Below are positions 23,614 to 27,785 of a DNA stretch of 64,000 nt, in pieces. The DNA is taken from sequence record PQ309151.1; one strand, given 5' to 3'. How positions within the stretch are numbered: position 1 is the first letter of the stretch; each line of letters starts with the position of its first letter. The position numbers and the translations under genes are program-made. Below the pieces are notes generated by a model. It was not told the DNA's origin, searched no databases, and worked only from the letters and a program-made list of their open reading frames with translations.

Positions 23614-24474
23614 TTAGGCGTAATGCATCTTGCGTGCTTTGCGATTCTGCTTCTTGATGCGAGCAGAACGCTGACGACGGTTCTTCTGATGCTCCTGGTT
23701 ATCCAGGCGTGCTTGCGTTTGATAATTCTCACGCTCGACATGTTTCACAGCACCAGCGAAGTAATCGTCAATGCCGCGACGGAAGAACTCAGTCTGCACA
23801 CTTTCCCACGTCGAGAGGTCTTCATCTTCCTTGCAACGATCGAACGGAACCGTGCAGGACATGATGACGCCTTGGGAGATGGGGCGGCCGAAGAATTCCA
23901 GAATCGCAACAGCCATGCATTCGCAACGATCAGCGTAGTGCAAATGCTGACGGTGACGATACAGAACGCCATTGAGATTCCTGATACGGAAGTGATGCTC
24001 GACGAACTGCATGAGATCCATACCGATGGCTTGTAAGCCTTTACGACCGGAATACTCGATGATCGCCTGCATGCCATGCATCATGATGACTGCGTAGTAA
24101 TTCGGCATGTACTGCTCGATCAAATGCGTTTTCGTGCAGGCGCCTTCATACGCGATCAGTTCATCTTCGATCAGATCGAGTACTTGCTTGGTGAAACGTA
24201 CCAGCGAGTATTGGTGAAGCTTGCCGGTTTCGTTCAGCTTCTTGAGAGCGTCTTTGAACGCGTCGTAACGTTGGAACTGACACGCTCGTTCGACACTTCT
24301 CTGCATTGCGTCGACATGAAGCAGACGTTTGAGTTCTCGTCTGTCTTTACGCGACAACTTCTTTTCTTTCTTCGGTCTCTTCCAGGACATGAAAGCTTTG
24401 ATCGCGATGACAACGATCAGACACAACAGCCCTGCTACCCCAACACCCACAGCGTTCAAGTTATACATTTTCAA
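23614..24474 (-). CDS. N-terminally membrane-anchored protein with basic termini
   Basis: Hydrophobic VGVGVAGLLCLIVVIAIKAFM followed by KRPKKEKK; K/R-rich C-terminus. Confidence 0.65.
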   Translation of the reverse strand: MKMYNLNAVGVGVAGLLCLIVVIAIKAFMSWKRPKKEKKLSRKDRRELKRLLHVDAMQRSVERACQFQRYDAFKDALKKLNETGKLHQYSLVRFTKQVLDLIEDELIAYEGACTKTHLIEQYMPNYYAVIMMHGMQAIIEYSGRKGLQAIGMDLMQFVEHHFRIRNLNGVLYRHRQHLHYADRCECMAVAILEFFGRPISQGVIMSCTVPFDRCKEDEDLSTWESVQTEFFRRGIDDYFAGAVKHVERENYQTQARLDNQEHQKNRRQRSARIKKQNRKARKMHYA

Positions 24475-24491: not shown

Positions 24492-24896
24492 TCATTCAGG
24501 AATGTAGGAAAGAACTACGTACGCAATACCAGGTTCGAGACCGATCTTGTCACCTAAGATCGGAATCAAGCTAATGCCGGCCAGAGTCGACAGATACAGC
24601 GCTGTCAATCCAGCCTTGTCGTCTTCGAAAGTACATTCACAAGTGAACGCACCATCGTCCTCGACTATTTTACCAGCTACAATGCACTGGCTAAAATCCG
24701 TTTTGCCGGGATTCTTCTCCCGGATGTACTGCTGGAGTGCGTAGGCCAAACGAGCCGGTCTGGAGCCCTCGTTGTAAGCCGCAAAGTGCTTCCTCCACTC
24801 ATCCAGCGTGGTCTCGTACTCAGGCGGCAGAAAAATGTCCACGACCTGATTAGTACGAGACCGGATAGTCTTTTGAACTAACCGGTCAAGACTCAT
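24492..24896 (-). CDS. Hypothetical protein
   Basis: 134 aa; GAGGAG RBS; stop-start spacing of 1 nt from the upstream gene. Confidence 0.6.
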   Translation of the reverse strand: MSLDRLVQKTIRSRTNQVVDIFLPPEYETTLDEWRKHFAAYNEGSRPARLAYALQQYIREKNPGKTDFSQCIVAGKIVEDDGAFTCECTFEDDKAGLTALYLSTLAGISLIPILGDKIGLEPGIAYVVLSYIPE

Positions 24897-24897
24897 A

Positions 24898-25173
24898 TTA
24901 CTCCTCGTTCAGATGCTTAATTACCTTGTCAAAGACGTCTTGCCAGGTAGAGAACGGACCATCGAGAAAACCGATATCCAATTCATCTTCCAGTTCAGAC
25001 ATGATGTCCATGTGATCCAGCGAATCCAGATCCCCGCTCTGGAAAGGCAACGCCAGGAACTCACGGAACTCCGTACTGTTCTCGACCGCGGTCTTGCGAA
25101 CCGTTTTCGTGTCGTACGACGATACTACTTGAACGAGCACTCGACGTGCCTTCTGTGCTTTGGCCTCAGCCAT
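24898..25173 (-). CDS. Acyl carrier protein-like
   Basis: DLDSLDHMDIMSELEDELDI aligns with the ACP signature GADSLDTVELVMALEEEFD (Ser retained); VENSTEF ~ VTNNASF; STWQDVFD ~ TTVQAAID; 91 aa, acidic. Confidence 0.75.
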   Translation of the reverse strand: MAEAKAQKARRVLVQVVSSYDTKTVRKTAVENSTEFREFLALPFQSGDLDSLDHMDIMSELEDELDIGFLDGPFSTWQDVFDKVIKHLNEE

Positions 25174-25228
25174 TTTAAAAACCCCTGCTTGTTATTACTG
25201 TTACTGGTTTCGGTCGAAAACCAAATAA

Positions 25229-25426
25229 TCAGTCTCGGGTTATGTTGTATAAATCTTTCAGTTCGGGATGGAATACACGAAGCTGAAGCATGTCTCGGCA
25301 ATTGGGGATTTCGTTGAATTCGAAGAACATGTTGAAGGCTTGTCCTTTCTCATCAACCAGTTGACAGAGGAAGTGTCTGTCTTGAGGTAGCTTCTTCATC
25401 AATTCGATTACGTCTGCCGGTGTCAT
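25229..25426 (-). CDS. Small hypothetical protein
   Basis: 65 aa; GAGG RBS; begins just after the terminator at 25455-25498. Confidence 0.55.
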   Translation of the reverse strand: MTPADVIELMKKLPQDRHFLCQLVDEKGQAFNMFFEFNEIPNCRDMLQLRVFHPELKDLYNITRD

Positions 25427-25454: not shown

Positions 25455-25498
25455 AAAAGGGCGGTACAGAGAGGCCGAAGCCTCCCCATACCGTGCCT
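25455..25498 (-). terminator. Rho-independent terminator (UUCG loop plus U-tract)
   Basis: Minus strand GGCACGGTATGGGGAGGC-TTCG-GCCTCTCTGTACCGCCC-TTTTT. Confidence 0.8.
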
Positions 25499-25499
25499 A

Positions 25500-25990
25500 A
25501 GATGAAACTGAACTTACAATCCAAGGTCGTCGCATCACCACAAGGAAATGACGAGTGACGACTATGGGCTGTAAGCTTGGCAGCGAGCGTCTCCCGACGT
25601 TTCGCATAGCTTACAACTGTCCCGGAAAGACCCCTTACAGACGATACGGGCTTAACACACACGAAGGCCCGAGTGCTCAATACGCAGCCGCGAACGCGCG
25701 CGGCAGCGATACGGCAAGACATCACTGAACTCTTAAAGAGATCTCATATCGGCGGCACTAAGAGGCGGCCATGAGACGTGACTGCGCTGCGGGTAGAGGA
25801 CACGATATCTCTTGATCGAACCTCAGCCGCAATACGACGTGTGTGTTTCGCGGGCCTTTCACCCGAGTGAAGAGTAGCGGCGTAACGCCGGCCCTAACAC
25901 CTCTGCCTCGAACAGATCTTCAGAAGCCCTCTTGTTAAAGAACGAACAGGCGGAACGATCCCTCACGAGATTGGTCCCGCCAGCAGACTA
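25500..25990 (-). ncRNA. Candidate large structured non-coding RNA
   Basis: ~490 nt with no credible ORF; multiple helices, GGGA/GAAA/GTGA tetraloops on the minus strand, 10-nt and 8-nt long-range complementarities, downstream terminator. Confidence 0.55.
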
Positions 25991-25993
25991 CGC

Positions 25994-27346
25994 TTACGGT
26001 TGCAGCGTGTCGGTTTCGTCAGCAGCAGCTGCGCCGTCTGCATCTGCCTTCACTTCGGTTTGAGCCGGAGCTTGTGCATCTGCTTGCGGTGCGACTTCTG
26101 CCGTACCTTCAGCAGCCGGGGCTGCGTCGACAGCGGGAGCAGCGACTTGTTCAGCCGTTGTGTCCACTGCCGGCGTTTCCACGGCCGGAACTTCTGCTTG
26201 CGCTTGTGCAGCGTCGGTTTCCACCGGCGCAGCCGTTTGCGCTGCGTCAGCAGCTTGTTCCACCGGAGCAGCGTCGACCGGAGCGCCTGCGAGTGCAGCT
26301 GCCGTTGCCGGATCTGCATTCACTTCAGGCGTTTGGGCCAGAGCTTCGGGCGAGTGATCGACTTCAGCCGGAGCATCGGCGGTTTGTTCCACCGCAGGAG
26401 CTTCGGTTTGAGCCACATCACCAGCCGGTGCGGTTGCTTGTTCTGCAGCGGGGACTTCAGCTTGAGCAGCGTCTGCTGCCGGGGCATCCACCTGTGCTGC
26501 AACTTCCGGTGCTGCTTGCTCGCCGGCGGCGGGGTCGACTTCCGGGGCAGCTTCTTGAGCCACGCCTTCGTCGGCTGCGCCAGCCGGTTGAGCTTGTTCA
26601 GCAGCAGTGTCGGTCGTTTCAGCTGCAGCTTGGGCCGGTACTTCGGCTTGAGCATCTGCTGCTTGATCGACGACTTGCGGAGCTGCGTCAACCGGGGTTT
26701 CAGCTTGCGCTTCGCCAGCGGCCGGATCCGTTTCTGCTACTGCGGGAGCTTCCGGCGTTTCCACCGGTGCTACGTCTGCGGGCTGTTCCACTGCGGGTGC
26801 AGCTTGTTCAGCCGTACCTGCATCCGTGCCCGCTGCCGGATCTTGAGCAGCGTCGCCAGCAACTGCGGGAGCCGCATCTGCCGGTTGTTCTGCTTGTGCG
26901 TCGCCTGCCGGCGCTGCATCGGTCGTGCCAGCGTCAGCCGGTGCGTCGACTTGTGCCGGGGCATCGCCCGTCGGTTGTGGTGCATCGGCGCCAGTGTTGT
27001 CTGCCGGAGTAGCAGCCTGGTCACCCGTCGATGCGTCCGCTTGCGAAGCGTCCGTACCTGCGTCTTGTTGTGCTGCGCCGTCAGCGATCTGGTTGTCCAG
27101 TTCAGCTGCGGCTGCGCCAGCGGCTGCGGCGGCTGCCGTACCATTGTCGCCCAGACCGAGTGCTTCGTTCGTGGTGTCGCCGAGAGGTGCGTCTTCGGCT
27201 GCCGGCGGAACGATCGGATGGTCTTCTTTCTTCTTGTGGAAGAGGCTGATAACGCGGTCGAGCACGTGCTCGGGCAGTGCGGCGAGGGCTTCGATCGCCA
27301 GGATTTCGGTCTTCAGTTCGTCGAGAACTTTGTGGATGAGGCTCAC
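25994..27346 (-). CDS. Acidic Ala/Pro/Glu/Asp/Gln-rich intrinsically disordered protein with degenerate repeats
   Basis: 450 aa; AAGGA RBS; ~40-aa helical N-terminus, then ~400 aa almost devoid of K/R and aromatic residues. Confidence 0.8.
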   Translation of the reverse strand: MSLIHKVLDELKTEILAIEALAALPEHVLDRVISLFHKKKEDHPIVPPAAEDAPLGDTTNEALGLGDNGTAAAAAAGAAAAELDNQIADGAAQQDAGTDASQADASTGDQAATPADNTGADAPQPTGDAPAQVDAPADAGTTDAAPAGDAQAEQPADAAPAVAGDAAQDPAAGTDAGTAEQAAPAVEQPADVAPVETPEAPAVAETDPAAGEAQAETPVDAAPQVVDQAADAQAEVPAQAAAETTDTAAEQAQPAGAADEGVAQEAAPEVDPAAGEQAAPEVAAQVDAPAADAAQAEVPAAEQATAPAGDVAQTEAPAVEQTADAPAEVDHSPEALAQTPEVNADPATAAALAGAPVDAAPVEQAADAAQTAAPVETDAAQAQAEVPAVETPAVDTTAEQVAAPAVDAAPAAEGTAEVAPQADAQAPAQTEVKADADGAAAADETDTLQP

Positions 27347-27419: not shown

Positions 27420-27785
27420 TTACGGGTGCCAGACGACGGTAAAAGCGGGTAATGCAAGGCTCAGAGCGAAGAGGAGTTTGCATGCAATATGCAGCCCCTG
27501 ATCGGTCATTGCGCCGATGAAATTCTTGACCCGGAACATGTCGATGACCCAGTGCCAGATGAATTCACAGAAGCCGATTACGAATGCGGCTTTCGGAACA
27601 AACAACCACGCAACAGATCCCGTAGCCACGCCTTGAATCAAAGCGTGAACCGTCAAGCCGTACCACCAGGGGAAGATTTCCACACGACCACTCTTCATGG
27701 CGGACAGGAATTCTCCTTGGCCAGGAAAGTCGAAGAATGCGTGAACTGCCAGCAGAACAGCGAGGACTACGAGAAAGTGCTGCAT
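27420..27785 (-). CDS. DUF3307-like membrane protein
   Basis: HAFFDFPGQ, HALIQ, HWVID and DQGLH motifs within hydrophobic helices. Confidence 0.7.
   Translation of the reverse strand: MQHFLVVLAVLLAVHAFFDFPGQGEFLSAMKSGRVEIFPWWYGLTVHALIQGVATGSVAWLFVPKAAFVIGFCEFIWHWVIDMFRVKNFIGAMTDQGLHIACKLLFALSLALPAFTVVWHP

What the first reader, a model, noticed from the sequence alone, without database searches (positions are those of the whole stretch)
24898..25173. Phage-encoded acyl carrier protein-like gene
The protein keeps the DSL serine (DLDSLD), the acidic helix II (MDIMSELEDELDI) and helix IV, with a ~7-aa insertion before the serine. No fatty-acid or PKS genes are in the window. ACP is established as the acyl donor in lipid synthesis and as a partner of SpoT and MukB. 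Inference: it supplies lipid for the early infection vesicle, acts as a decoy or mimic of host ACP for stringent-response or defence proteins, or acylates phage proteins.
Basis: partly seen in the sequence, partly recalled or inferred. Interest (0 to 1): 0.7.

Follow-up and report, generated by a model that had tools for sequence, protein, structure and literature searches.

The report
Phage ACP look-alike with dispensable serine
A giant phage of the plant bacterium Ralstonia encodes a small protein that really has the acyl carrier protein fold, but close relatives often lack the cofactor serine, so the protein most likely works by binding other proteins and not by carrying fatty acids.

Summary
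ORF 24898-25173 (-) is gene ACEO27_00169 of Ralstonia phage RsoM3USA, a Chiangmaivirus in the Chimalliviridae. It encodes a 91-aa acidic protein (pI 4.5). Its AlphaFold model (pLDDT 84.5) matches almost only acyl/peptidyl carrier proteins (Z up to 9.6). Sequence similarity to PP-binding is remote: the window protein gets no Pfam hit, but 13 of 24 relatives do, and a family profile finds only carrier proteins in the PDB.

The interpretation needs correction. The DSL serine is present here, but it is replaced in 12 of 30 family members (Ala, Thr, Val, Phe, Pro, Gln, Leu). At least 7 of these losses are independent. Serine-less alleles remain under purifying selection (dN/dS 0.17-0.28).

Asp50, Asp53, Asp56, Glu60 and Glu62 of helix II stay (nearly) invariant, as does a family-specific N-terminal helix. 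The phage genome has no PPTase, ligase, ketosynthase or acyltransferase.

Acyl carrying is therefore not the conserved function. A cofactor-independent docking or decoy role is most likely. The partner is unknown. The gene is tightly coupled to a 134-aa gene and followed by a basic membrane-anchored protein. A sister phage already annotates its copy as "ACP-like". This scan noted serine-less ACP look-alikes in other phages before.

The parts
24898..25173 (-). ACP-fold gene (91 aa plus stop); ACEO27_00169 / XHV16134.1
   Evidence: ORF list and record annotation. PHROG 31629 at E 1.5e-58. AF2 model plus carrier-protein structural matches. dN/dS 0.16-0.28 against relatives.
25114..25170 (-). Helix I including a ~7-residue N-terminal extension (residues 2-20, AEAKAQKARRVLVQVVSSY). 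This is the most conserved part of the family; Q7 and R10 are invariant.
   Evidence: DSSP of the model. Column statistics.
25021..25023 (-). Codon TCG of Ser51, the position equivalent to the phosphopantetheine serine. It is present here but variable in the family (S18 A4 T3 V1 F1 P1 Q1 L1 of 30).
   Evidence: Sequence. Alignments. Codon comparison TCG/GCG/ACG/CCG. Tree.
24982..25023 (-). Helix II (residues 51-64), the acidic recognition helix. E60 and E62 are invariant and D53, D56 and I57 nearly so; the invariant D50 lies just before the helix.
   Evidence: Aligned to ACP helix II.
24904..24945 (-). Helix IV (residues 77-90), with invariant W77 and nearly invariant F81.
24894..24906 (-). 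Coupling junction GAGGAG-TAA-T-ATG. The last two codons of the ACP-like gene form a Shine-Dalgarno-like GAGGAG for the next gene, and stop and start are 1 nt apart.
   Evidence: Sequence. The same tight spacing (-4 to +3 nt) is seen in relatives L004, L007, L013, L014, L015 and L018. The gap is 45 nt in L003.
24492..24896 (-). Downstream 134-aa gene (PHROG 35468, unknown function), always next to the ACP-like gene. Candidate partner (inferred only).
   Evidence: The model has pLDDT 68 and weak top matches to the prohead-protease fold, but the family has no invariant His or Ser.
23614..24468 (-). 284-aa protein with an N-terminal transmembrane helix and a very basic cytoplasmic part (pI 9.6, net +16.5). 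Third gene of the conserved run. Candidate partner by charge complementarity (inferred only).
   Evidence: Present in all relatives' loci.
25229..25426 (-). Upstream 65-aa gene (PHROG 35443, unknown function), first gene of the conserved run.
25462..25493 (-). Strong terminator-like hairpin (14 bp, then CCCTTTTTGC) just upstream of the four-gene run. It probably marks the boundary of the transcription unit.

Best explanation
The gene encodes a diverged member of the acyl carrier protein superfamily. It has been re-purposed as a small acidic docking or adaptor protein that works without the phosphopantetheine cofactor.

Shown: it has the ACP fold. The attachment serine is dispensable in the family. 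The acidic helix II and a family-specific N-terminal helix are under strong constraint. The phage encodes no enzyme that could load, use or modify a carrier.

Inferred: the protein binds a basic surface of a dedicated partner through helix II (D50, D53, D56, E60, E62) together with helix I and loop I (Q7, R10, Y20, D21, S33, F36). The most likely partner is encoded in the same conserved four-gene run. Candidates are the translationally coupled 134-aa protein and the basic, membrane-anchored 284-aa protein, which would give a complex at the cytoplasmic face of the membrane.

I put about 0.7 on the umbrella claim 'acts by binding, not by carrying'. I put 0.4 on the specific version with a dedicated, probably phage-encoded partner. 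In this phage the serine is still present, so the host AcpS may well modify the protein, but the family shows that this is not required.
For: Fold: model pLDDT 84.5. Essentially all of the top 50 exhaustive PDB structural matches are carrier proteins, with Z up to 9.6. Atlas neighbours are PP-binding clusters. Profile-to-PDB hits are all carrier proteins.

Serine dispensable: 10 of 24 members, and 12 of 30 with the extra members, have A/T/V/F/P/Q/L at position 51, while D50 is invariant. The tree needs at least 7 losses of Ser. Losses are not clustered and occur inside the window protein's own well-supported clade. dN/dS of the window gene is 0.28 against the Ala allele and 0.17 against the Thr allele, compared with 0.155 against a Ser allele. 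Serine-less alleles come from large phage contigs of 119-220 kb with the same gene order.

No carrier machinery: no ACPS, PP-binding, AMP-binding, ketoacyl-synthase or PlsC-type acyltransferase match in the 225.6-kb genome. None is annotated in the better-annotated sister phage SURPRISE13 over 1-203.7 kb; the last ~24 kb of that record were not read.

Family-specific interface: residues 1-40 are the most conserved part. Q7 and R10, on the N-terminal extension and helix I, are invariant and have no counterpart conservation in canonical ACPs.

Operon context: the order 65 aa / ACP-like / 118-139 aa / ~280-320 aa is kept down to 37% identity. Stop-start spacing to the next gene is -4 to +3 nt in 7 of 8 loci. 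The third protein is basic (pI 9.6, +16.5) and has a TM anchor.

Precedent: the mitochondrial ACP of Plasmodium lacks the cofactor and acts as an essential binding subunit of Isd11-Nfs1 (PMC8547962).
Against: No partner was identified. The complex prediction for the ACP-like and 134-aa proteins gave no answer, which is not evidence either way.

Conserved gene order and tight spacing are common in related phage genomes and are weak evidence for physical association.

Eighteen of 30 members, including this one, keep a perfect D-S-L-D motif, so modification may matter in some lineages.

The residues conserved on helix II are exactly those that canonical ACPs use for host enzymes, which fits a host-directed decoy as well as an adaptor.

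All structural evidence rests on a predicted model. There are no expression data beyond one short RNA-library contig.
Confidence: 0.4

Rival explanations
1. Decoy of the host acyl carrier protein. The protein uses its ACP-like helix II to occupy host proteins that normally bind AcpP, such as AcpS, PlsB/PlsX, LpxA/LpxD, Fab enzymes, SpoT, MukB-type SMC proteins or IscS. This would block or redirect host lipid and envelope synthesis, the stringent response or a defence protein. The serine is irrelevant or even undesirable.
For: The canonical recognition positions are invariant or nearly so while the serine drifts. These are the equivalents of E. coli ACP D35, D38, E41 and E47; the mapping is from my own knowledge and the alignments. 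The protein is acidic like ACP (pI 4.5, -9). The phage has no carrier-using enzymes. From established knowledge (Keating, Carey and Cronan 1995, recalled and not read here), unmodified apo-ACP is a potent growth inhibitor in E. coli, acting on glycerol-3-phosphate acyltransferase. Unchecked notes of this scan report serine-less ACP look-alikes in unrelated phages, which would fit a common host target.
Against: The helix III region (residues 66-75), part of the usual ACP-client interface, is variable. The non-canonical N-terminal helix is the most conserved part, which points to a specific partner and not generic mimicry. Identity to real ACPs is only about 20-25%. No target was tested. Many decoys would be expected to lose the serine altogether, yet 60% keep it.
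Confidence: 0.27
2. Genuine carrier protein in this phage. Host AcpS or an Sfp-type PPTase converts Ser51 to the holo form, and host or unrecognised phage enzymes load it with an acyl or aminoacyl group. The group is then used for lipid, envelope or protein modification during infection. Serine-less relatives would have changed or lost this function.
For: The window protein has an intact D-S-L-D motif at the N-terminus of helix II and the acidic residues that PPTases recognise. Eighteen of 30 members keep Ser. The hosts, Ralstonia and Burkholderia, have PPTases and ACP-dependent pathways (established knowledge). The genome contains two GNAT acetyltransferase genes in the sister phage and a radical-SAM/2OG-oxygenase cluster of unknown role.
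Against: The serine was lost at least 7 times independently, including in the closest clade. Purifying selection on those alleles is unchanged and all other invariant residues are retained. No PPTase, ligase, ketosynthase, acyltransferase or thioesterase-type partner lies in the phage or next to the gene in any relative. True carriers essentially never tolerate loss of this serine.
Confidence: 0.2
3. An acidic nucleic-acid mimic, or a decaying remnant of a captured host or phage ACP gene with no ACP-related role.
For: Net charge is -9 and the protein is small, like some phage anti-restriction or anti-defence proteins. The family is confined to one phage clade.
Against: The charge is ordinary for an ACP and far from that of known DNA mimics. 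The gene is under clear purifying selection, has a constant 91-aa length and has 11 invariant columns across 24 members, so it is not decaying.
Confidence: 0.06

Closest known systems
Bacterial type II acyl carrier proteins (AcpP; Pfam PP-binding PF00550)
   Same: Four-helix bundle with Ser at the N-terminus of an acidic helix II. The D-S-L-D motif is present in the window protein. Best structural matches have Z 8.7-9.6. Remote profile similarity is centred on helix II to helix IV.
   Different: The window protein does not reach any curated threshold. It has a ~7-residue N-terminal extension and ~8 extra residues in loop I, and no predicted helix III. The serine is not conserved in the family. 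There is no fatty-acid, PKS or NRPS context and no PPTase in the genome.
Plasmodium falciparum mitochondrial ACP (cofactor-less ACP that stabilises Isd11-Nfs1; Falekun et al. 2021, PMC8547962)
   Same: An ACP homologue in a system without fatty-acid synthesis enzymes that lacks the Ppant group and acts as a binding subunit. One phage family member even has Phe, and one Leu, at the serine position.
   Different: It is eukaryotic and organellar, and its partner is an LYR-motif protein. No LYR-type partner is recognised here, and here the serine is facultative, not uniformly lost.
Other stand-alone ACP genes annotated in phages (PHROG 5934; Eneladusvirus Erwinia jumbo phages, PMC7760394; Flavobacterium jumbophages, PMC13573597)
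   Same: Small ACP-type genes in large phage genomes without lipid-synthesis genes. Function is untested in every case. PHROG 5934 matches weakly (E 0.014).
   Different: Different sequence family: this one is PHROG 31629, 'unknown function'. It is restricted to Chiangmaivirus-like phages and soil or root metagenomes. In Eneladusvirus the ACP was detected in virions by mass spectrometry; nothing comparable is known here.
Serine-less ACP look-alikes noted by this scan in other phages (Pseudomonas phage Lu11; a giant Burkholderia phage; N-terminal domains of rIIB in Aeromonas T4-like phages)
   Same: The same theme: ACP fold, cofactor serine missing, and presumed docking or decoy role (unchecked AI notes).
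   Different: No sequence relation was tested. Those cases have fixed Ser-to-Asp/Glu changes or are fused domains. Here the protein is free-standing and the serine comes and goes between close relatives.

Membership tests
Acyl carrier protein superfamily (PP-binding, PF00550 / SCOP ACP-like) | Four-helix, up-and-down bundle of about 75-90 residues | tested here: met
   AF2 model with pLDDT 84.5. Essentially all top-50 PDB matches are carrier proteins, Z 7.0-9.6. Atlas TM 0.60-0.68 to PP-binding clusters. Foldseek alone was weak: only 8gsa, E 0.17, probability 0.98.
Acyl carrier protein superfamily (PP-binding, PF00550 / SCOP ACP-like) | Sequence match to the family model above the curated threshold | tested here: inconclusive
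   The window protein has no PF00550 hit at E<=10, and NCBIfam ACP models score 15-17 bits against cut-offs of 66-71. At family level, 13 of 24 members hit PF00550 at E<=0.1, and P0020 scores 21.9 bits against a cut-off of 20.8. The family profile hits PDB carrier proteins at E down to 9e-4.
Acyl carrier protein superfamily (PP-binding, PF00550 / SCOP ACP-like) | Conserved serine (D-S-L) at the N-terminus of helix II as the phosphopantetheine attachment site | tested here: inconclusive
   Present in the window protein (Ser51, codon 25021-25023). It is not conserved in its family: 12 of 30 members have A/T/V/F/P/Q/L, through at least 7 independent changes.
Functional (holo) acyl carrier | Actual 4'-phosphopantetheinylation and acyl loading | not testable with these tools
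   Needs intact-mass spectrometry or in vitro AcpS/Sfp assays.
Functional (holo) acyl carrier | Cognate PPTase and carrier-using enzymes (ligase, ketosynthase, acyltransferase) encoded with it | tested here: not met
   No PF01648, PF00501, PF00109 or PF01553 match and no second PF00550 in the whole phage genome. No such gene lies beside it in any relative's locus. Host enzymes could substitute.
Cofactor-independent ACP subunits (Plasmodium mACP type) | ACP fold kept under selection without the attachment serine | tested here: met
   At family level, serine-less alleles have dN/dS 0.17-0.28 and keep all other invariant residues. The window's own allele still has Ser.
Cofactor-independent ACP subunits (Plasmodium mACP type) | Stable binding to a defined partner protein | tested here: inconclusive
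   The single complex prediction (ACP-like with the 134-aa neighbour) returned 'no answer'. No other partner was tested.

The most novel reading that the evidence does not exclude
The protein is a phage-made decoy of the host acyl carrier protein. It docks through its intact recognition helix onto a host ACP client, such as phospholipid or lipid A acyltransferases, AcpS, SpoT, or an SMC/MukB-like or other defence protein, and switches it off during infection. Together with the serine-less ACP look-alikes seen in unrelated phages, this would define a widespread and so far unrecognised host-takeover strategy aimed at the ACP interaction network.
Probability: 0.25. Interest if true: 0.75.

Novelty: new variant of a known kind. 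Interest (0 to 1): 0.5.

Why it matters
ACP is one of the most connected proteins in bacteria, and phage-encoded ACP genes have been annotated repeatedly but never explained. This family is a natural experiment. Close relatives differ only in whether the cofactor serine is present, yet all keep the recognition helix. That argues that phages use the ACP fold as a binding module.

The result turns a vague 'auxiliary metabolic gene' label into a specific and cheap set of tests: Ser-to-Ala phage mutant, helix II charge reversal, and pull-down. If the partner is a host ACP client, it would reveal a new takeover or anti-defence route in nucleus-forming jumbo phages that are being developed for biocontrol of Ralstonia and Burkholderia plant pathogens. 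If the partner is the neighbouring membrane protein, it would identify a new phage membrane complex. The practical annotation lesson is that such genes should not be counted as lipid-metabolism AMGs.

Tried and rejected
- Pfam on the window protein alone gave only a chance-level DUF1892 hit.
- Foldseek against PDB and Swiss-Prot AFDB was nearly blank: one ACP at E 0.17, the rest noise. The fold only became clear with the exhaustive aligner.
- The feature-based Atlas search gave leads only (score 0.89-0.90).
- Complex prediction of the ACP-like protein with the coupled 134-aa protein returned 'no answer' (score 0.00, controls not run). It counts neither for nor against binding.
- The 134-aa neighbour has no Pfam, PDB-sequence or Atlas lead. 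Its model (pLDDT 68) weakly resembles prohead or herpesvirus proteases (Z 6.1 and 4.9; Foldseek E 0.01), but the family has no invariant His or Ser, so I do not call it a protease.
- The 284-aa neighbour has no Pfam or Atlas lead.
- A search for paralogues in the phage genome found none.
- IMG/VR added only RSL2, RSF1 and one 218.7-kb UViG.
- Laying public runs gave one 215-nt contig from a root metatranscriptome library over 25000-25214. This is at best a weak hint of transcription, because DNA can be present in such libraries.
- The sigma-70 promoter scan found nothing above the shuffle expectation (3 sites against a mean of 1.8), and chimallivirus promoters are not covered by it.
- The whole genome could not be placed in the Python box because no G000 is held.
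- I considered the radical-SAM/2OG-oxygenase cluster as a possible carrier-using pathway. I set it aside because it lies more than 110 kb away and nothing links it to the ACP-like gene.

Full report
**What and where.** The window is a stretch of Ralstonia phage RsoM3USA (PQ309151.1, 225,638 bp; window coordinate + 124000 = record coordinate). Its relatives are RSL2, RSF1, FLC6, FLC8, FLC4-x and Burkholderia phage SURPRISE13. The SURPRISE13 paper places these in the genus Chiangmaivirus, family Chimalliviridae (PMC11898562). The ORF 24898..25173 on the minus strand (91 aa) is annotated there as 'hypothetical protein' ACEO27_00169. The SURPRISE13 orthologue (gp207) is annotated 'acyl carrier protein-like superfamily protein'. 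One JGI and one NCBI metagenomic member carry the name 'acyl carrier protein'. It is a single-copy gene in the phage.

**Is it ACP-like?** Sequence evidence for the window protein alone is weak.
- It has no PF00550 hit.
- It matches PHROG 31629 ('unknown function') at E 1.5e-58 and the ACP PHROG 5934 only at E 0.014.
- NCBIfam ACP models score 15-17 bits, against cut-offs of 66-71.
- PDB ACPs score E 0.15-0.75, always aligned on DSLD plus helix II.

At family level the link is consistent.
- Thirteen of 24 members hit PF00550 at E<=0.1 (best 3e-5), and one passes the gathering score.
- A family profile finds 112 PDB sequences at E<=1, and the 60 listed are all carrier proteins.
- The exhaustive profile search of 1.84 billion representatives finds, after 8 family clusters, bona fide PP-binding proteins at E 2e-4 to 1e-3.

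Structure settles the question. The AF2 model (pLDDT 84.5, pTM 0.74) has helices 2-20, 27-30, 33-40, 51-64 and 77-90. When it is aligned against 48,161 PDB representatives, essentially every one of the top 50 matches is an acyl or peptidyl carrier protein or domain (Z 7.0-9.6, rmsd 2.1-3.2 A, 68-82 residues). Shape neighbours in the ESM Atlas are PP-binding clusters. Foldseek alone nearly missed this.

**The serine.** I collected 30 distinct family members and aligned 24 of them.
- Asp50 is invariant, and Asp53, Asp56 and Ile57 are nearly so. Glu60, Glu62 and Trp77 are invariant.
- Position 51 is Ser in only 18 of 30. The others are Ala (4), Thr (3), Val, Phe, Pro, Gln and Leu. Column entropy is 1.95 bits, next to columns at 0-0.25 bits.
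- On a maximum-likelihood tree the Ser state needs at least 7 changes. The labels are no more clustered than shuffled labels. The window protein's own well-supported six-member clade contains Ser, Thr and Ala alleles.
- The changes are single first-position substitutions: TCG to GCG, ACG or CCG.
- Serine-less alleles are not decaying. They come from 119-220 kb phage contigs with the same gene order, keep the 91-aa length and all other invariant residues, and show dN/dS of 0.28 (Ala) and 0.17 (Thr) against the window gene. The Ser allele of SURPRISE13 gives 0.155.

In true carriers this serine is the one indispensable residue. Here it is dispensable.

**No carrier machinery.** Six-frame searches of the complete RsoM3USA genome find no 4'-phosphopantetheinyl transferase (PF01648), no second PP-binding domain, no AMP-binding ligase, no ketoacyl synthase and no PlsC-type acyltransferase. 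Positive controls rang in 10-14 reference genomes. The more richly annotated SURPRISE13 record lists none either over the 1-203.7 kb that I read. The phage does have four radical-SAM genes, with 2OG oxygenases, cupin and DHFR in SURPRISE13. They lie more than 110 kb away and nothing links them to this gene.

**What is conserved instead.** Two surfaces stand out.
- The first is the acidic helix II. By the alignments, and from my own knowledge of E. coli ACP numbering, its conserved residues correspond to D35, D38, E41 and E47. These are the residues canonical ACPs use to dock on basic patches of their client enzymes.
- The second is a family-specific surface: the N-terminal extension and helix I (M1, Q7 and R10 invariant; E3, L13, V17, Y20 and D21 nearly so) together with loop I (V25, A29, S33, F36, F39, L40).

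The helix III region (residues 66-75) and the loop just before the serine are variable. The protein is acidic (pI 4.5, net -9).

**Context.** The gene is the second of a four-gene minus-strand run that is conserved down to 37% identity:
- a 65-aa protein;
- the ACP-like protein;
- a 118-139-aa protein;
- a protein of about 280-320 aa.

This run is followed by the divergently transcribed non-virion RNA polymerase beta-prime block. A strong terminator-like hairpin (25462-25493) precedes the run.

The ACP-like stop and the next start are 1 nt apart, with GAGGAG as the last two codons. Seven of eight loci examined have -4 to +3 nt spacing.

The 134-aa protein has no recognisable family. Its modest model (pLDDT 68) resembles the prohead/herpesvirus protease fold only weakly, and the family has no invariant His or Ser. 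The 284-aa protein has an N-terminal transmembrane helix and a very basic remainder (pI 9.6, +16.5). That makes it an attractive partner for an acidic ACP-like protein on charge grounds alone, but this is inference.

The one complex prediction available to me (ACP-like with the 134-aa protein) returned 'no answer' and is not used as evidence. A 215-nt contig from a root metatranscriptome library covers 25000-25214, which is only a weak hint of transcription.

**Mechanism.** I put about 0.7 on the umbrella conclusion that the conserved function is protein binding without the cofactor, not acyl transport. Within that conclusion:
- Dedicated adaptor role (0.4). The non-canonical N-terminal surface is the most conserved part, and the gene is coupled to conserved neighbours.
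- Decoy of host AcpS or AcpP clients (0.27). The canonical recognition residues are retained. From recalled literature not read here, apo-ACP is toxic in E. coli.

A true holo-carrier role in Ser-bearing phages such as this one keeps 0.2, because the D-S-L-D motif is perfect and host PPTases are available.

**Comparison and novelty.** The closest characterised analogue in logic is the Plasmodium mitochondrial ACP. It has lost the cofactor and survives as an essential binding subunit (PMC8547962). Stand-alone ACP genes have been noted in other jumbo phages without functional work (PMC7760394, PMC13573597). This scan's own unchecked notes report serine-less ACP look-alikes in phage Lu11, in a giant Burkholderia phage and fused to rIIB in Aeromonas phages. 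The theme has therefore been seen before on other DNA.

The ACP-likeness of this family is already in public annotation. What is new here is the evidence that the serine is facultative within one closely knit family under continued selection. I rate it a new variant of a known kind, with moderate interest (0.5).

Noticed in passing
window 25455-25990 (-), hairpin 25462-25493: The largest gene-free gap next to the four-gene run ends in a strong 14-bp terminator-like hairpin followed by CCCTTTTTGC. I did not examine that claim.
   Followed up: no
window 25994-27346 (-): A 450-aa ORF of extreme composition: Ala/Asp/Pro/Glu/Gln/Thr-rich, pI 4.05, net charge about -80, with no Pfam or PHROG match. 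Its length varies between relatives (361-450 aa at the same position).
   Followed up: no
window 23614-24468 (-): A 284-aa protein with one N-terminal transmembrane helix and a very basic cytoplasmic part, including the C-terminal tail KNRRQRSARIKKQNRKARK (pI 9.6, +16.5). It is conserved in all relatives, and no family was found.
   Followed up: partly
window 24492-24896 (-): The model of the 134-aa protein (pLDDT 68) has T4 gp21 and herpesvirus assemblin-type proteases as its top, weak structural matches. The family has no invariant His or Ser. The invariant motif is L-P-P-E-Y.
   Followed up: partly
PQ309151.1 record 28.4-38.5 kb (outside the window); L009 23000-36300 in SURPRISE13: A cluster with four radical-SAM genes. 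In SURPRISE13 it also has two 2OG-Fe(II) oxygenases, a cupin and two DHFR-like genes. This is a sizeable enzymatic cassette of unknown product in these jumbo phages.
   Followed up: no
L012 2080-2325: The nearest bona fide PP-binding protein found by the family profile (P0028, 81 aa, with the motif IPDNAFITWKN like the phage family) also sits on a phage-like contig of small ORFs with NUDIX and GNAT genes and no lipid-synthesis genes.
   Followed up: partly
window 27420-27785 (-): A DUF3307 membrane protein (PHROG 2470) is conserved a few genes upstream of the ACP-like gene in all longer relatives' loci.
   Followed up: no
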